64,000 bases of DNA from Entomortierella parvispora E1425 (lineage: Eukaryota; Fungi; Mortierellomycota), in NCBI GenBank assembly GCA_020891255.1, contig BQFW01000011.1:1426001-1490000 (forward strand). Direction: 5' to 3'. Within the stretch, counting starts at the first letter, position 1. Every line of letters begins with the position of its first letter. A model generated the notes under the pieces. It was not told the DNA's origin, did not search any database, and was given only the letters and a program-made list of their open reading frames with translations. Below are positions 26,124 to 37,387 of this stretch, one piece after another. Both the position numbers and the translations under genes were made by a program.

Positions 26124-26911
26124 ATGGTCCGCATTTCCGTCTTGAACGACTGCCTCAACAACATCAACAATGCCGAGAAGCGCGGCAAGCGCCAGGTGTT
26201 GATCCGTCCTTCCTCGAAGGTCATTGTCAAGTTCTTGTCCTTGATGCAGAAGCATGGTATGTTATTTTAACTTGACGTTTTTAGAACGGCTTTCTCTTCT
26301 TTTATGTCTTCCATCATTTCAATTGCTCGCTCTCTTTCCTTACCTGTCATATTACCCGAAGTTTTATTATCTTGATGATTGTTGCGCTACCGGCTCTTTT
26401 CATTTTGCTGTCCACGATGCACTCAACCTTTGTCTGTTAAACACCTCGGAAGAACAACTACACTTCTTACAAGCTTTTGGCACTACATCTGTGGCCTCTA
26501 GCCTTTAAATAGTGAAGACACTCCTTCCTCCTTTCTTTTTCCTCTCATGTCCCCATTCCTTTATCTATTTTTTTCTGTGTTCATATTTTCATTTGATGCA
26601 GGAAACTAATATTTTTTTGCTGTTTGCGATACGATAACCCCCTCTTGTTAGGCTACATTGGCGAGTTTGAGGAGATTGATGACCACCGCTCTGGAAAGAT
26701 TGTCGTCCAGCTCATTGGACGCATCAACAAGACTGGTGTTATCTCGCCCCGTTTCAACATCAAGTTGAACGAGATTGAGAAGTGGATCGCTCGTCTTTTG
26801 CCTTCCCGTCAGTTTGGTTACATTATCTTGACCACCTCTGCTGGAATCATGGACCACGAGGAGGCCCGTCGTCGCCACACCGGAGGAAAGGTCTTGGGTT
26901 ACTTTTACTAA
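26124..26911 (+). CDS. RPS22: 40S ribosomal protein uS8 (S22/S15A); exons 26124-26256 and 26652-26911
   Basis: [38 protein letters not shown]…KH|[21 protein letters not shown]…GKVLGYFY. Confidence 0.98.
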
Positions 26912-27165
26912 AGTCTGCAGAATAAACACCTTTGCCTACTCTCTTATGAACAATTCAAAAATAATAAACTATACCTTTGTACATCAGTACACTCTTCAGT
27001 CCCTCCGCTGTCTTTGATATCATGATGCAAGATGAAATGGCATGAACGTTTTCATGTGGGTTTATTCAAAAGAGAAAGTGAGATTATGTATCAGAGGTAA
27101 TAGTTGAGTAAAGGGCATTTCTGCAACGGGTCTATTCAAGTTAAACTTGGCTGGCTGTGGCGTGT

Positions 27166-28710
27166 TCAATCGGTAGTTCCCTCGGGCTTTTGGTTGACGC
27201 CAAAGAGACGGACCTGGTGCATCGCTGGGAGCTTGGCAATCAGGTTGATGACAGTCGCAACCAAGTTGACAAAGAAGGCGAAGGGAGCATAGTGAGTGTA
27301 GTGGGTGCTGAGCAAGAACCTAGGAGTCGGGACAAAAAGGCAAAGGTTGTTAGAGATTCCGTTCGGCTGCTTGCAAAAACTGGGTCTTCATTAAATCCGT
27401 GTGCCCAACTTGACATGTTTCCAGTTTCCTTTGGATATCTGTCAGGCCTCTGGCAGAATAGAAAATTGCCTTCCTGGGATCTCCTGCGCAGTCCATCAAC
27501 CCGCGCCTAACTTCTGGGTCAATCTATTAACAAAGTACTCCATGATACTTACAACACAACAGGGACAGCTGTAAGGTACTTTCTGGTAGCAGTAAATTGG
27601 ACACCACCATCAATCTGCTCCCAGAGGGTAATTCCATCGTATGCTCCCTGAGTAAATTCGAATGGTACACCCGTTACTGCGTGGAACATGATATAAGATC
27701 CCTAGAAGATTCATAAAAAGAAGAACGGGTGTGAGTACATGAACACAATCCAACCTCAGTCTACTCAGCAATTGATGGTCCTGTGCATCAGATCCAGGCA
27801 CCCTAGGTAGCGTTATAATTTTTAAAGTCGATCCAACGCCCAATGTTGCCAAAGCCCCAGTTAAATCCATGTTCCATGAAGCGGGATCCTGGCTCGCCCT
27901 TTATTCCACCTTCCGATCGTGGGTCAGTTGATCCAAAACAAACAAAGAAAAACATGTCCCGGGCTGTGCTCCTGGTGATCCTATGCGTCTTCTCTACGCT
28001 CAGTTTTCTGGAGAGGCGTTCTCCTGGATTATTGCTGCAAAGAGATCCCGACAGATCCAAGGGCTTTTGACCGTTGGGAACCACATGACCAGTTAAGAAA
28101 AAGCGACTTTTTTCTGTTTTTGAAGAGTCCACAAGAGAATAGTGTAAACGTACGATGTTGTAGACAAGGGTGGTCAATGTCCAGCTAAGCTCGGGTGAGA
28201 TGCCGGGGATGATGCCAAAGACAAACTTGAGGAAGACGATGAGGATGATGTTGGTCATCCAGGCACCTAGGTCGATCCATGAGAAATGATTAGACTCTAA
28301 TGGGTCAGGCTACACAAACCCCCCGTTCTCACGTCATTGTCCTCCTCAAACATTATCCATCGTCCAATCTGAAGCTGATCAAGTTCTCTTTCCTGTCGTA
28401 TGAAAGACCATAAAAGTGGAATGTTGCTGGGGTTGTGCAAAGGAGACTGCGCAGACAGGGACCTCCTGAGCCAATGCATCCAGTGCCAAGGCCTTTTTCC
28501 TTTTTTTTCAATGAACGAAGCAAAAGGTCGATGAACTGTCGCTGCTGTCGAATCGGAGAGTGGAGCGACAGAGATGGCGAGAATGAAAGAGGAAGGAGAG
28601 CAGGAAAGCAGCCTACCTTTGTCGTTCACCCAGGACGAGTTGAGGTTGGTCTGGGAGTGTTGATCAAGGGACTGGACATAGTCCGTCTTGTACATGGAGG
28701 CGAGGGTCAT
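27166..28710 (-). CDS. ORM1: ORM/ORMDL serine palmitoyltransferase regulator, 4 exons
   Basis: NLNSSWVNDK|GAWMTNII…SWTLTTLVYNI|GSYIMFHAVTGVPFE…TLWEQIDGGVQFTATRKYLTAVPVVL|FLLSTHYTHY…IAKLPAMHQVRLFGVN. Confidence 0.93.
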
Positions 28711-29218
28711 GATTGTTGAGGAAGAGGAAGACCTGTGATGAAGCGTGCGCGCAATAAAGGCAAGGAAGATGGGGATGGAAGAAGGGAGGAGGGAAGGAAA
28801 GAAAAAGGTGAAGATGTAGTGAGCAGATGAGGGGACGAGAAAGAGGTGAAAGAGAGAGATGATGACACGCAGGAAGGAATGGATGCCAATGCGGGTCTTG
28901 CAGGCAGTGTCTGTCGTGTGCAAACAAGGCAGGAAAGGACACCCCCGCTGTCTGCTGTGCAACCAACCAATCAACCAACCAACGAAGTCCTCGCCCACCC
29001 ACCCTGCCCGCAAAACGGCCCTGTCCGGATCGATCGACCGCACGCTGGCACGGACACACCCTCCACCCTCTTCCCCTTCGTGTGCATCCGTCGCTTCCTT
29101 CCTTCTTTCTTTCCATCGCCTTCTCTCTCCTCTTCTCCTTCTTCTTCTTCTTATTCATCCATTCATTCCCTTCCTCTCTCGCTCGCTTTCACTTCATTCA
29201 GTCACGTTTATACGCAAC

Positions 29219-31814
29219 ATGGTCGCCGTCACCGCAGAGGTCTTCAAGACAACCACCTCGCTTCCATTCACTCCTGCCGAGCTCGGAGATTTCCATCGAT
29301 TTCATGCCTACGACTGGGACAATGACACTGACTTCCAAGCCGGACTCAAGACCATCGCCGAAGCAAAGACCATTGAGCCCTCTTTCTCAGAACTGCTCAA
29401 AATGAAGCAATACTACTTTTCCACGAGGTAGGTATATTTGACCCCCTCTCTGTTCTCATGCAAATCTCGGTCTACATGGAAATCCTGTGCTGCGCTCTCC
29501 TTCGCAATATTAACCTGCTCCGAATTTCATAGACAAGATGTCCGAATCAATCTAGATGACTATCTTTCCTGGAGAAAACACATTGAACAACCTTCCGACG
29601 ACCCCAACGTGCCCATCTTTAAGCGGTTCGACGAATATGACTTTGACAACGACGTCAAATTTCAGCAAGGGCTGCCCAGCTTTATTGGACAGCTCCTGAA
29701 GGACGGAAAGAATACCATGGACAAGGCCACACTCCAGAAGGAGATTACAAAGGCAAAGGCCTTTTATTACGCGAGGTAATCAGAGCTTGTATAACACGCA
29801 CCTTCTTCTTTTTCACTCCCCACAGCAGTCGCGCAAAGTCAACAAGCTAACTTCTTTCCATCCGGACCTTTCGCATAGATTTGTCGAACTGTTTGACTTT
29901 CCCGCATATGTGATTTGGAAAGAAATGGAAAAGTCACTGGCTGCCCCTGCTTGCCCCTACGCCCATCTCTGGCAGAACAAGGGCAAAGGATCAGGAAGCG
30001 AACTAGCCGAGGACTCTAAAAAGTTCTTGACCTCCACCTACCCAGTGTCGGCAGGCGCAGCTCAGGTTCACATTCATTCTCCAGCCACCAGGAACAAACT
30101 CACGGGCGTCCGCTTGGCAAAGATAAGCGAGGCCATTACGGGGGCTTCTGAGAAAGAGGCCATCACCTCCATTTACTGGACTGTCAACACTGGAAAGTCT
30201 ACTCAGACTGAACGCGATCCTGAATCACAGATTGTTACAAAGGACGAAAAGTGGTTCAGTGGTGGACTTGTTGTTAAGGATCCGAAGGACTTGGAATCAA
30301 CCACCACGATGGGCTCTGCAGCATCGACAGAACTTTTGCAACAATACTACTCACTGGTGAAACAAGTGACCGATTTCTCGACTGAGCCACAGAGACCTGT
30401 TGTCGTGGTTGTAGATGGAATTGTATCTTTGTCCTCTGCCTACTTGGCCTTTGGCACTGGAGCTCAACGCGTGATCACAGAAAATGCCACCCTTTCCTTC
30501 ACGCCTTTGCAGGAATTGGACGATACCCCTAATCAACTCAAAAATCCTTTTGCTGGACTTTATTTGCTCTCCAAGGTGCAGTCCAGGGCCCTCTCCGATA
30601 CTAGCCCCCGGTCATTGCCACGTGGAGTCGGTCATTACCTCGCTTTTTGCCCAGACTATATTCTGCGTGGCCCAGACTTGCGCAAATTGGGCCTAGCCGA
30701 CTTTTTTGTCTCGTCTGCAAAACTGAAGGATATCGAGGAATCTGTTCTTTCCATTGCCGGATGTCCTCCTCCTCACACAGTGAAGGCTATCCGAATGGCT
30801 TTGAATGCAGAGATTGTGTACCCTGGACCAGCCAAGATTGACGTTTGGCGGATGGAGATCCAGGCGTGCTTCGGGGTATGTTGATACGACATACCATTTT
30901 GATTCTATCCCACAAACTGGTCTAACAACCCGACAACTATTTTTTCCCCGTGTACTCTAGGACGCTAAATCGGTCGACGAAATTGTCACTAATTTGGAAA
31001 AGTACAACAACAACTGGTCAAAGTCAATTCGTGGATACATTGCCAACCTTGAACCGCTCCTGGCGAAGGTGAGAACAAACTGTCAACTCACTACGATGGA
31101 TACATGTTCTGGAGGTTTATTGAGAGGACACTAACAAACCTATCAACTCCATATTAGCTTCTGTTTGAGGGCATCAAGAGGGCTTCCGAAGCATCAACTT
31201 TTGAAGATGTTGTGCGCATCGAATCTAGACTGACACGGAGATACCATGACTACATGTCGCAGTCGCAGGAAAACAAAGAAGCACTTGAATCCATGGATGA
31301 TTTGAGCAAGTTCTTTGAGCCATTAGAGGATGAGAAGGATTTGCTCCGCTTCCCTTTTGCAGAATGGATCAAGGAACATGGCGAAGACGATGAAGCTGAA
31401 GAACTCGCCTCTGCCACTGGCGCGCAAGAGCCTGCCCAGGACCCTGCCCAAGCGTGCCCATACCTTGCTGGAAAGCAAGGCCAGAGTGCTGTACCAACCG
31501 ATCACCCCAACATTCCAGGAGTGGACTTTTCTGATCCTGAGGCTATCAAATCGTGCCCTTTCCTTTCGTCCAAGGCAGAGGCGGACGCTCAAGAAACGTT
31601 AGCGGTCCCCGCGGATCATCCAGTTATCCCTGGGGTGGACTTCAATGACCCGGAGGCAGTCAAGGCATGTCCCTTCCTGTCAGCCAAGAGGGAGGAAACA
31701 CCTGCAGTGCCTGCAGATCATCCCGCTATCCCTGGAGTGGACTTCTCGAATCCAGAGGCCATGAAGGCATGCCCGTTCTTGTCATCCCAAGCTCCCCAAA
31801 GCGAGGCACAATAA
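29219..31814 (+). CDS. Unusual fusion: 2x PEX39/C6orf226-like N-terminal domain + degenerate HIBCH-like crotonase domain + Cys-Pro repeats (5 exons)
   Basis: Exons ~29219-29427, 29533-29775, 29879-30875, 30961-~31068 and 31159-31814 join in frame. Repeated YD[WF]DNDxxFQxGL…K.[YF]Y…Y..W units; crotonase-like RPVVVVVDGIV…QRVITENATL…GLADFFVSSAKL; C-terminal VPxDHPxIPGVDFxxPEAxKxCPFLS x3. Confidence 0.75.
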
Positions 31815-31992
31815 GCAGGTAGATTGGGGCAATAAAAGCAACTTGATATCGCTTTTCCACCTTGGTCTTCATTTCTTTATGATGAATATGATTGATTACT
31901 TTATAGGTATTCCTACAAAAAAGAATCTTCTCTTGCCCTCAGGACAGGGAAGTAATGGCATGATTGTGCATCGCTACGTTTCTTCTATGACT

Positions 31993-32541
31993 CTAGAAAG
32001 AGAATCCGCAGTCGCAAGGGGAGCCGGAAGAGAAATCGAATCCGCAATCACGATGGTGATGACCAAAGCCGCCATCACAAAAGCCGCCACCCAAGAATCC
32101 ATCGCCAAAGCCGCCATCGCACCCATCGTCACAGCTGTCGTTACAGCTGTCGTCACAGCATCCGTCACAGCATCCGTCACAGCATTCGTCACAGCAGTCG
32201 CCACCGTCCCAGCGCTTAAAGACAGAAGGCACCGGGAAAGGGTATCCGGACGCAACGGGAACAGGGACTCCATAATAAGAAGGGTAAGGGATTGGGATCG
32301 TCGGTGCCACATTCACTTGAGGTGCAATATCAGTGTTTGCAATCACGTTGGAAACAGTTGTCGCTTGTGAGACTGGGTTGATGGCCATAGAAGAGCCGAG
32401 TCCTGCAGCAGGTGCGCTAGAGATGGCGGCTATATCGGGGCCGCCAATGCCTGAACCGGGAACGAGAGGAGAGGCCATAGAGTTCGCACAGAAAGAGAGC
32501 AAGCCCCCGAGGCAGATCGTGATTTTGAAGTTGGTCAACAT
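31993..32541 (-). CDS. Small secreted protein (182 aa) with signal peptide, KR site and Cys/Asp/Gly-rich C-terminal peptide
   Basis: Hydrophobic N-terminus …LGGLLSFCANSMASPL; FKR|WDGGDCCDECCDGCCDGCCDDSCNDSCDDGC…; single intronless ORF. Confidence 0.75.
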   Translation of the reverse strand: MLTNFKITICLGGLLSFCANSMASPLVPGSGIGGPDIAAISSAPAAGLGSSMAINPVSQATTVSNVIANTDIAPQVNVAPTIPIPYPSYYGVPVPVASGYPFPVPSVFKRWDGGDCCDECCDGCCDGCCDDSCNDSCDDGCDGGFGDGFLGGGFCDGGFGHHHRDCGFDFSSGSPCDCGFSF

Positions 32542-32864: not shown

Positions 32865-33812
32865 TTATTCACTATCAGAGCCCTTGGAAAAGCCCTTCTT
32901 CTTCTTCTTTGCCATTTTTTCAGCTCGCTGATCCAAATATGTCGAAAGGAAATCTGTGGGTCTTTTCTTGTTGATACTGCTGGAGCTGGAGTTGGAGCCT
33001 TTAGATGAGGCCGAACTTGACGCCTGATGCCCCTCTGAAGCGGCTGCCTTGAGAATAGAAGGGTGAACAGCTGCCACATATGCCTTGGCCGACTTTTGTT
33101 TCTTTTGACTTGTAGATTGGGCACTTGAAGAGTGTGAAGGAGCTGTGGCTGGACTGGATTTTTTGGACGAGGACGCAGAAGTAGCCCCAATATTCCTTGT
33201 CCGACTATCCTCTTCATCCTCTGCTTGCTGCTGGAGCTCTTTCCGTTTGGCGGCCATCATCAATTTGTGCTCCATGTATTTGTCAGGGAGCGCTTTCCTG
33301 TCAGCCTCTTCCTGCCGTTGAATCTCGCCTCCGATCACGCCTCCTGTCAATTGTCGCCTCAATTTGGACTCGAATGCATTCAAAGGAACGTGTCGCATCG
33401 CGTCCTTGTGTGAGATAAACTTTGCTCCAAGTCCCAATCTATGTTTTGATTCAATGCAACACAGAGAACGATGGGTCATTAGAAAGCCATATTCCATTGA
33501 TATCCCTCCCAAAAAAAAAAAAAGAATACAGAACTTTGCCAGAATCAAATTCCATGCTCCTTACCCTGCCTGTCGTGGTTTAACAGCTGCTGAAGCAGAG
33601 ACAAAGCTTCCGGGACTACTGGATCCAGAGTCTTCATCATCCGAAAAGGCGTCCGCAGAGAGCCAAGAGGAGACTGTGGACCTTGCTAACGAGACCGAGA
33701 CATCCAGTTGAGTCTTCAAGGCGTCCAAAGCTTCAAACTGCTCCTTGCGCTGCTTCTTTGTCAAGTGTCCTCCGACCGTCGCTCCTGTTACAGACGTTGC
33801 TTGCTCTGACAT
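32865..33812 (-). CDS. Conserved fungal hypothetical protein (DUF3245-like) with a basic C-terminal NLS, 2 exons
   Basis: …ARSTVSSWL…KPRQAG|LGLGAKF…LRRQL…; GTAAGG donor at ~33570; ends KMAKKKKKGFSKGSDSE. Confidence 0.55.
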
Positions 33813-34975
33813 TCTCTGTACGGCTGGCGTTGCTCTGTTTGGGAATGCCTGTCCGTGAATGGGGCGTGTTTATGAATGTCTCATGCACATGGTGCATGGT
33901 CCTGGCTCGTTTTGGTGGCCATTGAATTCAGTGGCTTAGTATTGACCAAAAAGTGACTGCTCTTTGTCCAGCTGGCTGCCACGGCGGCCAAGACCTAGTG
34001 GACGCGCGTGCTGTCATCACCATCCAGAGTAATGGTCCGACGATCCATGACTGAGCAATGAGCTAACGTCGTCTCCGACGGAAACCCCGCGCAGGCTCCT
34101 TCTCCCATTTCGCCGTATGGGCAACAATGTACTTTTGCTTTTTTTTTTTCTTTTTTTTTTTGTGCAGTGTGCCCCATCTCTGGGGCTAGGGGGCTGAGAT
34201 CAGCTCTGGGAATTGGTCCGTCTCCAGTAGCGGAGCACAAGGGGGGCTAGTCATCAAGCAGTGGTTGTGCATGAAAAGAGATATTTTTGGCGCATGATTG
34301 TGACCCTACTCTCGGAGCACACCTTCTCAATGTTCCGTTGGAAACAGGAACAAATCTCGGTAACACCTTTCATTCTCAACTTTATTTGGAACTAGCAAGT
34401 CTTTGCGCGCTGTGGTCGAAACCGTCAACGAGGTCACCTTGGTTTGTAGCCACTGTAACTAACTCACGCGAGTGGAACGAAGGCTCTCATCTCGCTTCTT
34501 TTTTTTTTTTTTTTTTTTGTATTGAGACTCGAAGTGTGCTCTCTACCCTCCCCTGCTCGGAAGTTGGAACGACACACAATCCTGGTCCGCGATGATGAAT
34601 GGAGGGGGAAGGTTCCCATCGATTAGCAAAAAGGGACAGTGGACAAAAGGGCGGAGTGGGTCAAGAGAGCCCTCACTGCGAGAACTACAACGCGACTTTT
34701 CTTTCTGGAAAGAATGTCTGGAATGGCAAGCCAACACTTCTATTTTAACCACACCTTTGATACAGGGAGCGGACACACAGGTGGGTTCGGCATGCTGTCA
34801 TGTTTTACGGGACTATAAAGAGGAAGCTGTCCCCAGCTCAGGGATGAACTCTTTGAACACTACCATCAAAGGATTCCCCCTACCCACTCAGTTTCAGCCT
34901 GACGTTATACCACGAACGAACATCTACTCTCCCCCACTCAACACCTCCCCTTCTTCTCCATCTAAACTCTACACA

Positions 34976-35557
34976 ATGAAGTACTCTGCCATCCTCGCCC
35001 TTGCCTCTATCGCCGTCGTCGCTGCCCAGTCTGAAGGTGCTGATGAGGGCCGTCTCTACTACTCCGAGCCCATCACCAGCACTGTGTGGACTGCTGGCAA
35101 GAACCACACCGTCTCTTGGACAAATGTCTGCAAATCCGAGAACACTGGTGATCTCAACATCGTCCTCTACAAGGGCACCGGCGGCATCAACGACACTGAA
35201 CAGGTCCGTGTCCCCGGAATCTCAGCCATTGGCAAACTCAACTGCTTGAAGAGTAAGTCGGCCACCGTCACTCTCCCCGCCAACTTGACCACCAGCAACG
35301 TCTACGCGATCCATGTCGACACTGAGCCCCTCCAGTCGTACTCTTCCCACTTCACCATCCAGGGCATTGACCCCGTGACTACCGCTCCTGTCACCGCCCC
35401 CGCCACTGCCTCTTCCGCTGCCGCCACCTCGGGAGGTGCTAGCGCAACCACCTCGGGCTCCTCCAACCCCACTGACAAGCCTAACGGTGCTGGTTCCCTT
35501 AAGGTCGTTGGTTCTTCTGCCATGGTTGTCCTTGCTGCGATCGCCATGATGTTCTAG
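34976..35557 (+). CDS. Secreted, probably GPI-anchored Ser/Thr-rich protein with a Kre9/Knh1-like Ig domain
   Basis: Signal peptide MKYSAILALASIAVVAAQ; EPITSTVWTAGKNHTVSW…YAIHV…SYSSHFTI; S/T/A-rich stalk; NGAGSLK plus hydrophobic tail. Confidence 0.85.
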   Translation: MKYSAILALASIAVVAAQSEGADEGRLYYSEPITSTVWTAGKNHTVSWTNVCKSENTGDLNIVLYKGTGGINDTEQVRVPGISAIGKLNCLKSKSATVTLPANLTTSNVYAIHVDTEPLQSYSSHFTIQGIDPVTTAPVTAPATASSAAATSGGASATTSGSSNPTDKPNGAGSLKVVGSSAMVVLAAIAMMF

Positions 35558-36024
35558 AGATAGAAAGAACAGAACAACGCAAAAAAAAACATACATACCA
35601 TCGCATCTGAGATCTGGTTTGTACCCTTAATTACCCTATGTAGAATAAAAAAAGTCCCAATAATCAAATCAAATCGATCTGATCTTTGTAAAAGGCAATA
35701 TCCGATGTGACACTGAGTGAATTTTGGGTTTGATGTTGATATGATACGATATGAGATGATCCGTGCCTGATTTGAAGGTGATCATGGAGGGAAGGCGTCG
35801 TCCGTGACGGGTGCCATGGCTTGCCTTCCCCACTGCGCAGGGCCAATTGGCTGCCCTATAAAAGAGGAAGCTTACTCCTCTTTCTCTTCTCTCCCTATCT
35901 TCACCCATTCACTCACATCACCCTCAAACGCACGCACACCGATCTTTTCTGTCGCAGAAACATAACTTCCCCTTGCGCTCTCTTTTTCCCACGCACTTCA
36001 TACCCACACATATATACAACAACA

Positions 36025-37387
36025 ATGGTTTACCTTTGGCTTAGAGCAGAGACCAAGGCTATGGAGCACCGCGCTGCCTTGACCCCTTCCACCTGCAAGA
36101 CTCTTCTCGACCGCGGATTCAGGATCACAGTAGAACGCTCGCGCGAGCGCATCTTTGATGACGAAGAATACGAAAAGTAAGGGTCCTTTCTTTTTTTTTT
36201 TTCATCTTTCATCCTCCGATCGTCCTCCTTTACTAATCTTTTCTTTTTTCTCCCCTACCTTCTTGCACCTAGGGTCGGATGTCATATGGTCCCTATCGGA
36301 GAATGGCGCAAGGCCCCTGAAGACGCCTATATTGTCGGCTTGAAGGAACTTCCCGAGGGCGAGACGGATCCTTTGCGTCACACCCACATCTTCTTTGCTC
36401 ATTGTTTCAAGAACCAGGGAGGCTGGACTGATATCCTGGGACGTTTTCATGAGGGCAAGGGCACCATCTTGGATCTCGAATTCTTGAACGATGGCAATGG
36501 ACGTCGTGTCGCCGCTTTTGGATACCACGCTGGATTTGCTGGCGCCGCCATCGGTGTCGACGACTGGTGCCATCAGAAGCTCAACCCCGGTCAGCCCCTG
36601 CCCCCTTACAAGCCCTTCCCCAACGAGGCTACATTGATCTCTCATATCAAGGAGCGTCTCGGAAGAGCAGGTAAATTCATCGTCCTCGGGACGAGGACAA
36701 AGAGATCTGATCTGGGAGAAAGCGAACAAAAAAAAAAAAAAAAAAAATGTGGGGGATCAGAAGATTATCGAATCGAATCGAATGGCTCACTTTTTTTTAA
36801 CATTTTGAAACTTTTTTTTTTTTTTAGTTGCTTTGAACAACAACCAAGTTCCCGAAGTCATGGTCATGGGAGCTTTGGGACGTTGTGGAAAGGGCGCTTG
36901 CGATTTCGCCAAGGCCGTGGGCATTCCTGAGGAGAAGATTATCCGTTGGGATATGGCCGAGACCAAGGAGGGAGGACCCTTCCCCCGCATCTTGCAGTCC
37001 GAGATCTTTGTCAACTGCATCTACCTGAACCAGCCCATCCCTCCCTTCTTTACCCCTGCCATGTTGGATGGAGAAAGAAAGCTGTCGGTAATCGTCGATG
37101 TCTCCTGCGATACCACCAACCCACACAACCCCATCCCCGTCTACTCTGTCAACACCACCTTTGACAAGGCCGTGGTTGAGGTCGTGACAAAGAACAAGGA
37201 TCTGCCCCTTGACGTCTGCTCCATTGATCACTTGCCCACCTTGCTGCCAAGAGAGTCCAGCGAAGCCTTCTCAAGAGATTTGCTTCCTACCATCATTGAC
37301 TTGGAGCGCCGTGATCAGAGCCCCGTCTGGGGAGGCGCCGAGGCCCTCTTCCATGAGAAGGTCAAGTCAATGAAGGCACTCCATTAA
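36025..37387 (+). CDS. LYS1: Saccharopine dehydrogenase (NAD+, L-lysine-forming), 3 exons
   Basis: LWLRAETKAMEHRAALTP, IVGLKELPE, HIFFAHCFKNQGGW, VAAFGYHAGFAGAA, VMGALGRCGKGA, DVSCDTTNPHNPIP, SIDHLPTLLPRESS. Confidence 0.97.

What the first reader, a model, noticed from the sequence alone, without database searches (positions are those of the whole stretch)
29219..31814. Unfamiliar fusion protein: tandem PEX39-like domains + dead crotonase/HIBCH fold + heme-motif-like Cys-Pro repeats
Seen: one spliced ORF with two copies of a YD[WF]DNDxxFQxGL…K.[YF]Y..R…Y..W unit, a HIBCH-like (ECH_2) body, and five Cys-Pro-aromatic motifs (ACPYAHL, ACPYLAG, SCPFLSS, ACPFLSA, ACPFLSS). Established: this unit resembles the N-terminal domain of fungal PEX39/C6orf226 (DUF5572-family) proteins, which normally end in a KPWE PEX7-binding motif; CP motifs bind heme in HO-2, HCCS and ALAS. 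Here no KPWE is visible. The crotonase lacks the usual FCAGGD oxyanion loop (reads WFSGGL), the GGG motif and the MPE…PD catalytic residues, and there is no mitochondrial presequence. Inference: a pseudoenzyme scaffold that may bind acyl-CoA and sense heme/redox state, an architecture I do not recognise as described.
Basis: partly seen in the sequence, partly recalled or inferred. Interest (0 to 1): 0.8.

Follow-up and report, generated by a model that had tools for sequence, protein, structure and literature searches.

The report
Dead HIBCH enzyme with PEX39 domains, Cys-Pro tail
This is a real, conserved but unstudied gene of "zygomycete" fungi: two copies of the unexplained N-terminal domain of the peroxisome-import factor PEX39, an enzyme-like body that has lost its catalytic residues, and a floppy tail of Cys-Pro motifs like those other proteins use to sense heme.

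Summary
A five-exon gene (29219-31814, +) encodes 737 aa. It is identical to the annotated hypothetical protein EMPS_08184 of Entomortierella parvispora.

- **N-terminus:** two tandem ~75-aa helical units, homologous to each other (hhalign E 4.6e-18). They carry Pfam HTH_76 ("PEX14-like helix-turn-helix"). Their nearest structural neighbours are the N-terminal domains of small fungal KPWE-domain proteins, that is PEX39 orthologues. No (R/K)PWE motif, PTS1 or PTS2 occurs in any of the family sequences in hand.
- **Body:** an HIBCH-type crotonase (ECH_2, 58 bits; Foldseek TM 0.73-0.77 to HIBCH structures). In the profile alignment the GGG loop, the second oxyanion-loop Gly with the following Asp, and the catalytic Glu/Asp are all replaced.
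- **Cysteines:** seven of eight are Cys-Pro (0.55 expected). One CP[YF]A[HN]LW hinge motif is invariant. Four sit in the poorly ordered tail as ACP[YF]L, like ALAS, IRP2 and HO-2 heme-regulatory motifs.
- **Range:** the architecture is kept across Mortierellomycota, Mucoromycota and Zoopagomycota and was found nowhere else.

Most likely it is a non-catalytic, heme- or redox-responsive scaffold. This function is inferred, not shown. No RNA data could be obtained. The family is uncharacterised.

The parts
29219..31814 (+). Whole gene: 5 exons (29219-29427, 29533-29775, 29879-30875, 30961-31068, 31158-31814) and 4 GT-AG introns. It encodes 737 aa, identical to EMPS_08184 of Entomortierella parvispora.
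29261..29593 (+). HTH_76 / PEX39 'region X'-like unit 1 (residues ~15-90; four helices; spans intron 1)
   Evidence: Unit 1 vs unit 2 hhalign E 4.6e-18. pLDDT ~90. AFDB KPWE-protein hits align to query residues 11-89.
29600..29942 (+). HTH_76 / PEX39 'region X'-like unit 2 (residues ~93-172; spans intron 2)
   Evidence: The top Atlas structural hit is a KPWE_dom + HTH_76 cluster.
29952..29984 (+). Hinge motif CPYAHLWQNKG (C176-G186). C176, P177 and W182 are invariant in the 26-sequence N-terminal alignment. C176 and P177 stay invariant, and W182 is >=90% conserved, in the 46-sequence full-length alignment.
30015..31280 (+). HIBCH-type crotonase body with C-terminal helical domain (residues ~197-560; spans introns 3 and 4)
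   Evidence: ECH_2 58.4 bits. Family profile vs human HIBCH 3bpt E 5.7e-15. Foldseek 4hdt/3bpt TM 0.73-0.77.
30252..30269 (+). WFSGGL (W276-L281), the degenerate counterpart of the HIBCH FCAGGD oxyanion loop
   Evidence: Profile alignment ('vfspgLal' vs 'AFCAGGDI'); sequence
30414..30560 (+). D330-L378, the former active-site segment. HIBCH GITMGGGVGL aligns with GIVSLSSAYL. The HIBCH MPE Glu and FPD Asp are replaced by non-acidic residues (about P360/L361 and F375). E352 of 'ITE' is kept.
30762..30776 (+). CPPPH (C446-H450), a conserved Cys-Pro motif inside the C-terminal helical domain (P447 is at least 90% conserved)
31281..31454 (+). Acidic, lower-confidence linker (residues 561-618)
   Evidence: pLDDT profile; sequence
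31455..31466 (+). Tail Cys-Pro motif 1, CPYL (C619)
31491..31811 (+). Three diverged 34-38-aa repeats, VP.DHP.IPGVDF..PEA.K.CPFLS. They carry CPFL motifs at C652 (31554), C690 (31668) and C724 (31770).
   Evidence: No DNA-level tandem repeat was found.

Best explanation
SHOWN. This is one conserved gene of zygomycete fungi (Mortierellomycota, Mucoromycota, Zoopagomycota). Its product has four parts:
- two tandem copies of the helical HTH_76 domain, which otherwise forms the N-terminus of fungal PEX39 (KPWE-domain) proteins;
- an invariant Cys-Pro-aromatic hinge motif;
- an HIBCH-type crotonase fold in which the GGG loop, the second oxyanion-loop Gly with the following Asp, and the catalytic Glu and Asp are all replaced;
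- an acidic, poorly ordered tail that ends in one to eight Cys-Pro-hydrophobic motifs.
It has no PEX7-binding (R/K)PWE motif and no PTS1 or PTS2.

INFERRED. It is not a 3-hydroxyisobutyryl-CoA hydrolase. It most likely works as a non-catalytic scaffold. The crotonase core would supply a stable, probably oligomeric, body. Whether it still binds CoA esters was not tested. The Cys-Pro motifs would act as heme-regulatory motifs: the Cys thiolate binds Fe(III)-heme transiently, with a nearby His as a possible sixth ligand, as in ALAS, IRP2, HO-2 and Hap1. Heme or thiol-redox state would then change the protein's conformation, stability or partners. The paired PEX39-type domains would contact whatever partner that domain contacts in PEX39. 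That partner is unknown, so a link to PTS2/peroxisomal import is possible but unproven.
For: One gene, conserved architecture.
- The model is identical to an annotated 737-aa protein.
- 43 full-length proteins of the same domain order turned up across Mortierellaceae and Umbelopsis at 35-100% identity to the search query. Identity to the window's own protein is 48-75% in Mortierellaceae and ~34% in Umbelopsis.
- More distant members at 22-40% come from Jimgerdemannia, Bifiguratus, Basidiobolus, Phycomyces, Pilobolus, Radiomyces, Rhizopus, Sporodiniella, Ramicandelaber, Dimargaris, Dispira, Spiromyces, Mycoemilia, Coemansia, Smittium and Thamnocephalis.
- An exhaustive HMMER scan of 1.84 billion representatives gave only 49 hits. 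Every hit that carries an organism name is a zygomycete.

PEX39-type domains. See, and the 'region X' legend in PMC12339391.

Dead HIBCH.
- ECH_2 matches 43 of 46 members.
- The family profile matches human HIBCH 3bpt at E 5.7e-15. In that alignment GITMGGGVGL pairs with GqvplsaayL, the MPE Glu pairs with a non-acidic column, and FPD pairs with aPi.
- Foldseek gives TM 0.73-0.77.

Cys-Pro motifs.
- 7 of 8 Cys in this protein, and 61% of 697 Cys in 74 family proteins, are followed by Pro.
- The residue after a tail CP is F, V, Y, I or M in 217 of 234 cases.
- Tails from different lineages cannot be aligned, yet a CP sits near the C-terminus in all 16 lineage representatives printed. A few Kickxellomycotina members (Spiromyces, Mycoemilia) instead carry the extra CPF motif at their N-terminus.
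- Motif forms are CPFLSA in Mortierellaceae, CPVTGQ in Mucorales and CPHFAA in Actinomortierella.
- Tail pLDDT is mostly 42-76.

Literature and weak profile support. ALAS heme-regulatory motifs are 'CPV/F' (PMC3136693). The peptides ACPYVM (HRI) and CPFHL (IRP2) bind heme at micromolar Kd (PMC10377097). Preseq_ALAS gives sub-threshold hits in 9 of 46 members.
Against: - No heme, CoA or partner binding has been measured for any member.
- A Cys-Pro motif is short, and other readings fit it: metal binding, a thiol switch, or a docking motif.
- Two of the seven CP motifs (C408, C446) lie inside folded parts and may be purely structural.
- The His of CPYAH is Asn in Mucorales.
- Crotonases are known for moving their catalytic residues. 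Conserved polar residues (E352, Y404, R414, Y465) leave room for a new activity.
- The function of the PEX39 N-terminal domain is itself unknown. The units gave no significant hit to any solved structure or to reviewed-protein models.
- Expression and splicing were not confirmed by reads.
Confidence: 0.45

Rival explanations
1. It is still an enzyme: a crotonase that has acquired a new function and uses a different set of catalytic residues on some acyl-CoA. The Cys-Pro motifs and the N-terminal domains would be regulatory or targeting additions.
For: - The crotonase core is the best conserved part. Near-invariant residues are G331, E352, P374, L378, G400, Y404, R414, Y465, P468 and W474.
- One Gly of the oxyanion loop is kept (F-S-x-G-L).
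- From general knowledge, the crotonase superfamily often relocates its acid/base residues.
Against: All canonical elements are missing together across the family: the GGG loop, the second oxyanion-loop Gly with the following Asp, and the HIBCH Glu and Asp. No replacement acidic pair is evident in the alignment. HIBCH-like folds are already known in non-catalytic roles, for example mitoribosomal mS47, which appeared among the hits.
Confidence: 0.2
2. The Cys-Pro motifs are not heme sites. They could bind a metal (Cu, Zn, Fe-S), form a thiol/disulfide redox switch, be acylated, or be short docking motifs for a partner protein.
For: - There are several single-Cys repeats at regular spacing in an acidic tail.
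- A His-Pro element recurs 13-20 residues after many tail CPs, for example CPVTGM.GK.P..HP and CPFLS...DHP. That would suit metal ligation as well as heme.
- The HO-2 Cys-Pro motifs are reported to form a redox switch (PMC2742820 title and abstract).
- Tail repeats reach pLDDT ~75, which hints that they dock on something.
Against: The conserved core is Cys-Pro plus a hydrophobic or aromatic residue, usually preceded by Ala. That is the published heme-regulatory-motif pattern. It is not a CxxC or CxC metal pattern. The exact strings CPFLS and CPFLA recall the ALAS motifs, but that recollection is from memory; only 'CPV/F' was checked in a paper.
Confidence: 0.2
3. It is an annotation or assembly artefact: two or three neighbouring genes wrongly joined into one model.
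For: No RNA evidence was obtainable. Some database entries are fragments that hold only the N-terminal or only the crotonase part (P0001, P0092-P0108).
Against: The same N-to-C order occurs in more than 60 independently annotated proteins from three phyla. Alignments run unbroken across all four exon junctions. The introns are short with GT-AG borders, and the phases fit. The fragments come from short contigs of 1-8 kb.
Confidence: 0.02
4. It is a divergent mitoribosomal mS47-type HIBCH-like structural protein.
For: mS47 chains from yeast, Neurospora, plant and protist mitoribosomes are among the sequence and fold hits.
Against: These hits score below the true HIBCH enzymes. The N-terminus (MVAVTAEVFKTTTSLPFTPAELGDF...) is not basic or amphipathic like a presequence (read from the sequence, no predictor run). 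The HTH_76 units and the Cys-Pro tail have no counterpart in mS47.
Confidence: 0.03

Closest known systems
3-hydroxyisobutyryl-CoA hydrolase (HIBCH; Pfam ECH_2; human 3BPT, Mycobacterium 4HDT)
   Same: Same fold, including the C-terminal helical domain. The profile match covers the whole domain (E 5.7e-15) with TM 0.73-0.77.
   Different: The GGG loop, the second oxyanion-loop Gly with the following Asp, and the catalytic Glu and Asp are replaced. ~190 aa are added at the N-terminus and ~180 aa at the C-terminus. Only 49 relatives exist among 1.84 billion representative proteins, and canonical HIBCHs fall below E 1e-3 with a single-sequence query.
PEX39 (yeast Yjr012c / human C6ORF226), the PEX7 chaperone of PTS2 import
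   Same: It shares the N-terminal helical domain (Pfam HTH_76). This fits the 'region X' of fungal, invertebrate and fish orthologues. Identity is 21-34% and rmsd 1.9-3 A over ~75 residues.
   Different: The domain is duplicated here. The defining DUF5572/KPWE domain and the (R/K)PWE motif that binds PEX7 are absent. PEX39 proteins are small, 100-280 aa.
Heme-regulatory motifs of ALAS, HO-2, IRP2, HRI, Hap1 and HCCS
   Same: A Cys-Pro followed by F, V or Y, often preceded by Ala, in flexible regions and in multiple copies.
   Different: Here the motifs are attached to a crotonase pseudoenzyme. One motif is an invariant hinge (CP[YF]A[HN]LW) and one is buried in the helical domain (CPPPH). Heme binding is untested.
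mS47, the HIBCH-like protein of mitochondrial ribosomes
   Same: A precedent for an HIBCH fold used as a structural rather than metabolic protein.
   Different: The sequence similarity is weaker. mS47 has no HTH_76 units and no Cys-Pro tail. The protein here has no apparent presequence.

Membership tests
Crotonase superfamily / ECH_2 (HIBCH-like) | Profile match to ECH_2 above the curated cut-off | tested here: met
   58.4 bits against a cut-off of 27.2 for the full protein. 43 of 46 family members match.
Crotonase superfamily / ECH_2 (HIBCH-like) | Crotonase fold with the HIBCH-type C-terminal helical domain | tested here: met
   AlphaFold model with pLDDT 81. Foldseek hits 4hdt and 3bpt at E 1e-13 and 7e-12, TM by target 0.77 and 0.73.
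Functional HIBCH (EC 3.1.2.4) | Oxyanion-hole motifs (FCAGGD loop and GGG loop) | tested here: not met
   AFCAGGDI aligns with vfspgLal (WFSGGL here). GITMGGGVGL aligns with GqvplsaayL (GIVSLSSAYL here).
Functional HIBCH (EC 3.1.2.4) | Catalytic Glu of MPE and Asp of FPD | tested here: not met
   Both columns are non-acidic in the family profile aligned to 3bpt. Assigning the roles of these two residues rests on my own knowledge of HIBCH.
PEX39 | (R/K)PWE motif / DUF5572 (KPWE_dom), the PEX7-binding element | tested here: not met
   No [KR]PWE in any family sequence in hand. The record holds only HTH_76 and ECH_2.
PEX39 | N-terminal HTH_76 domain ('region X'), present in most fungal orthologues but not defining | tested here: met
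   Precomputed PF25871 hit at E<=1e-5. AFDB-cluster and Atlas structural neighbours are KPWE-domain proteins. Two copies are present.
PEX39 | Binds PEX7 and stabilises PTS2 cargo | not testable with these tools
   Needs pull-down or a complex prediction with the organism's PEX7.
Heme-regulatory-motif (HRM) proteins | Cys-Pro dipeptide followed by a hydrophobic or aromatic residue | tested here: met
   7 CP in this protein. In family tails, 217 of 234 CPs are followed by F, V, Y, I or M.
Heme-regulatory-motif (HRM) proteins | Motif lies in a flexible or loop region | tested here: met
   Tail pLDDT is 42-76. The hinge motif lies in blocks with pLDDT 51-55. C408 and C446 are exceptions, inside folded regions.
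Heme-regulatory-motif (HRM) proteins | Cys-dependent transient Fe(III)-heme binding | not testable with these tools
   Needs UV/vis titration with hemin and Cys variants.

The most novel reading that the evidence does not exclude
This would be a heme-gated paralogue of the PEX39 system. The two PEX39-type domains would engage the same partner as the unexplained 'region X' of PEX39, at or near the peroxisomal PTS2 import machinery. Heme occupancy of the Cys-Pro array on a dead acyl-CoA-enzyme scaffold would switch that contact. Heme status would thereby be coupled to peroxisome function in early-diverging fungi. As a by-product, the family would reveal what the PEX39 region X does.
Probability: 0.1. 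Interest if true: 0.85.

Novelty: new variant of a known kind. Interest (0 to 1): 0.6.

Why it matters
- **A handle on PEX39 region X.** PEX39 was recognised as a peroxin only in 2024-25. [quoted passage not shown] Here that domain occurs duplicated and without the PEX7-binding motif, in an otherwise unrelated and ancient protein. That gives an independent way to ask what the domain binds.
- **A clear pseudoenzyme.** This is a family-wide, well-defined loss of catalytic residues in the crotonase/HIBCH lineage, which has few documented non-catalytic members.
- **Possible heme signalling in zygomycetes.** If the Cys-Pro array binds heme, this would be a heme-responsive factor specific to zygomycete fungi. 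These include Mucorales pathogens and oleaginous Mortierella, where heme and iron signalling is poorly known.

If none of this holds, it remains an ordinary lineage-specific hypothetical protein.

Tried and rejected
- **Pfam on single exons**. This gave only a sub-threshold ECH_2 hit and nothing for the N-terminus, because the domains straddle introns. The full-length id P0063 had to be found first.
- **Local Pfam copy.** It lacks PF25871, so the HTH_76 hit is known only from precomputed annotation.
- **Poxv_Bcl-2-like.** It appears below threshold on residues 64-139 in 13 of 46 members. I treat it as a chance match between helical segments.
- **Atlas feature searches** of the N-terminal part scored 0.45-0.52, which is uninformative.
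- **Foldseek of the N-terminal model** against the PDB and Swiss-Prot models found nothing at E<0.6. The list held only EF-hand noise, with no PEX14 N-domain and no Yjr012c. The Atlas shape search of the two-unit model was also empty.
- **Profile of the N-terminus against PDB sequences:** nothing.
- **Two profile searches of the 5.8-billion-protein set** with the N-terminal alignment returned only fragments of this family and no PEX39 sequences (one search was a parameter error). I therefore could not run a sequence-level profile-profile test against PEX39. That link rests on Pfam plus structure.
- **Tandem Repeats Finder** on the tail DNA found nothing. The repeats are visible only at protein level.
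- **RNA evidence.** No RNA run was listed. Four candidate runs gave only ~87%-identical contigs of relatives and no joints.
- **Literature searches** for the domain name, crotonase pseudoenzymes, and HRM plus enoyl-CoA hydratase: no papers.
- **Earlier findings of this scan:** nothing relevant.
Full report
**1. What is in the sequence**

Reading 29100-31950 on the + strand and splicing five exons gives one open frame of 737 codons plus stop. The exons are 29219-29427, 29533-29775, 29879-30875, 30961-31068 and 31158-31814. The four introns are 105, 103, 85 and 89 nt, and all have GT...AG borders. The product is 100% identical over its full length to P0063, 'hypothetical protein EMPS_08184 [Entomortierella parvispora]' (GCA_020891255.1, contig BQFW01000011.1).

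I could not confirm it with RNA. No RNA run was listed. The four runs I laid yielded only ~87%-identical contigs from relatives, with no splice joints. The indirect support is strong, though. Full-length proteins with the same order of parts are annotated in more than 40 other species, and the representative alignment of 46 of them is continuous across every exon junction.

**2. The N-terminal repeats**

Residues ~15-90 and ~93-172 are two copies of one four-helix unit. Profiles of unit 1 and unit 2, built from 26 family members, align with probability 99%, E 4.6e-18, over 77 columns. AlphaFold models them at pLDDT ~90.

The local Pfam copy finds nothing there. The precomputed annotation, made with a newer Pfam, puts PF25871 HTH_76 on this protein and on all 43 close relatives. 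UniRef names members 'PEX14-like helix-turn-helix domain-containing protein'.

Structure searches tie this domain to PEX39 in two ways:
- **AFDB clusters.** Against 2.3 million AlphaFold-DB fold clusters, the hits after the family's own three entries are dominated by 'Peroxisomal membrane protein PEX14-like KPWE domain-containing protein'. These are 130-280-aa proteins. Their first ~75 residues align to unit 1 or unit 2 at 21-34% identity, rmsd 1.9-3 A, Foldseek probability ~1.0 and E 0.002-2.
- **ESM Atlas.** The top structural neighbour of unit 2 is a Mucoromycota cluster in which 62% of members carry KPWE_dom and 59% carry HTH_76.

KPWE_dom/DUF5572 with its (R/K)PWE motif is the signature of PEX39 (Yjr012c/C6ORF226). 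PEX39 is the PEX7 chaperone of PTS2 import (PMC12339391, PMC12173945). [quoted passage not shown] The hit list also holds two non-fungal entries (A0A6P4Y9J8 and A0A401NLK2). By my recollection of those accessions, not by the tool, they are a lancelet and a shark protein, which would match that distribution.

The domain is 'region X', not the PEX7-binding part, and its function is unknown. No [KR]PWE, PTS1 or PTS2-like motif occurs in any family sequence in hand.

I could not retrieve PEX39 sequences for a sequence-level profile comparison. Searches of solved structures and reviewed-protein models gave nothing significant.

**3. The body**

ECH_2 matches the full protein at 58.4 bits against a cut-off of 27.2, and it matches 43 of 46 family members. 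A profile of 46 members hits human HIBCH (3bpt) at E 5.7e-15 over the whole domain. The model superposes on 4hdt and 3bpt with TM 0.77 and 0.73.

In the profile alignment the catalytic machinery is gone:

| HIBCH element | HIBCH sequence | Family consensus | This protein |
|---|---|---|---|
| Oxyanion loop | AFCAGGDI | vfspgLal | WFSGGL, 276-281 |
| GGG loop | GITMGGGVGL | GqvplsaayL | GIVSLSSAYL, 331-340 |
| Catalytic Glu | Glu of MPE | non-acidic column | about P360/L361 |
| Catalytic Asp | Asp of FPD | aPi | P374-F375 |

That these are the hydrolase's oxyanion and catalytic residues is established knowledge of HIBCH, which I did not re-derive. The 'dead enzyme' reading is therefore supported for HIBCH chemistry. 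A new activity cannot be excluded, because E352, Y404, R414 and Y465 are nearly invariant.

With a single-sequence query, an exhaustive HMMER scan of 1.84 billion representatives found only 49 proteins at E<=1e-3. This is a small and very divergent offshoot of the superfamily.

**4. The Cys-Pro motifs**

The protein has eight cysteines, and seven are followed by proline where 0.55 would be expected. Across 74 long family members, 424 of 697 cysteines (61%) are Cys-Pro. They fall into three classes.
- **Hinge motif.** CP[YF]A[HN]LWQNKG follows unit 2 directly. C176 and P177 are invariant in both alignments. W182 is invariant among the 26 N-terminal sequences and at least 90% conserved among the 46 full-length ones.
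- **Buried motif.** CP.P[HST]T lies inside the helical domain (C446).
- **Tail motifs.** One to eight motifs sit in an acidic C-terminal tail of lower model confidence (pLDDT mostly 42-76).

In this protein the tail holds ACPYLAG. It then holds three 34-38-aa repeats of the form VP.DHP.IPGVDF..PEA.K.CPFLS.

The tails of different lineages cannot be aligned. The motif is nevertheless there in all 16 lineage representatives examined:
- Mortierellaceae: CPFLSA.
- Actinomortierella: CPHFAA.
- Mucorales: CPVTGQ, repeated up to eight times.
- Umbelopsis and Endogonales: a single CPVTGM.GK.P..HP.
- Kickxellomycotina and Dimargaritales: CPFA.

Some Kickxellomycotina carry an extra CPF at residues 3-5, and a few of them (Spiromyces, Mycoemilia) have that instead of a tail motif. 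A chance Cys-Pro in a 60-residue tail is expected about 0.04 times, so recurrence across so many lineages cannot be chance.

The residue after the tail CP is F, V, Y, I or M in 217 of 234 cases, and the residue before it is Ala in 114. This is the published pattern of heme-regulatory motifs:
- 'CPV/F' in ALAS (PMC3136693).
- ACPYVM of HRI and CPFHL of IRP2 bind hemin at micromolar Kd. An aliphatic residue before the Cys and aromatic residues after the Pro are typical (PMC10377097).

Preseq_ALAS gives sub-threshold hits in 9 of 46 members, best E 0.0046. That is suggestive only.

**5. Distribution**

Named members come from three groups.
- **Mortierellomycota:** all genera sampled.
- **Mucoromycota:** Umbelopsis, Phycomyces, Pilobolus, Radiomyces, Rhizopus, Sporodiniella, Jimgerdemannia and Bifiguratus.
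- **Zoopagomycota:** Basidiobolus, Coemansia, Ramicandelaber, Spiromyces, Mycoemilia, Dimargaris, Dispira, Smittium and Thamnocephalis.

Nothing from Dikarya, chytrids or non-fungi reached E 1e-3. The family seems old and confined to zygomycetes.

**6. How it most likely works**

Shown: the architecture, its conservation, the loss of HIBCH catalytic residues, and the absence of PEX7-binding and peroxisomal targeting motifs.

Inferred, at about 45%: it is a non-catalytic scaffold whose Cys-Pro array binds heme transiently or acts as a thiol redox switch. That would alter contacts made by the paired PEX39-type domains.

Rivals:
- a crotonase with a new function that is still active (~20%);
- Cys-Pro motifs that serve metal binding, redox sensing or docking rather than heme (~20%);
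- an mS47-like structural role (~3%);
- an annotation artefact (~2%).

**7. Known or new**

The gene is deposited as a hypothetical protein, and some orthologues are auto-named HIBCH or EchA9. HTH_76 + ECH_2 is already auto-annotated. I found no paper on the family, on the domain name, or on any crotonase with heme-regulatory motifs. I rate it a new variant built from known modules. It is of moderate-to-good interest, mainly because it offers a second context for the unexplained PEX39 region X and a candidate heme-responsive factor in early-diverging fungi.

Noticed in passing
window 31993-32541 (-): An unannotated 182-aa ORF runs convergent to the gene, about 180 nt past its stop. It has a signal-peptide-like start and a Cys/Asp/Gly-rich run (CCDECCDGCCDGCCDD...). 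There is no Pfam hit, and it is not among the called genes of the public record. Local GC is 0.556, higher than the surroundings.
   Followed up: partly
window ~26124-28710 and ~32865-37387 (from L001 coordinates + 23218): The neighbouring called genes are unrelated housekeeping types: Ribosomal_S8 (+), ORMDL (-), a weak DUF3245 (-), a weak Kre9_KNH (+) and AlaDh_PNT_N (+). Nothing suggests a functional cluster.
   Followed up: no
P0079 (Gryganskiella cystojenkinii orthologue), residues ~60-70: The annotated orthologue lacks six residues (YYFSTR) exactly at the position of the exon 1/2 junction. This is probably a mis-placed splice site in that genome's annotation.
   Followed up: no
P0025, P0028, P0032, P0035, P0037 (Kickxellomycotina and Dimargaritales members), residues 3-30: These members carry an additional Cys-Pro-Phe motif at the extreme N-terminus, just before unit 1. 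Mortierellaceae have Leu-Pro-Phe at the aligned position and Coemansia has Cys-Thr-Phe.
   Followed up: partly
window 29082-29218: A CT-rich, strongly C-skewed stretch lies directly upstream of the start codon (GC skew -0.385 for 29000-29499). It is probably a pyrimidine-rich fungal core promoter or 5' UTR.
   Followed up: no
cluster of P0035: A 53-aa bacterial DUF2986 protein (Alteromonas) is listed as a member of the 90% cluster of the 812-aa Dimargaris protein. This looks like a clustering artefact in the protein collection.
   Followed up: no
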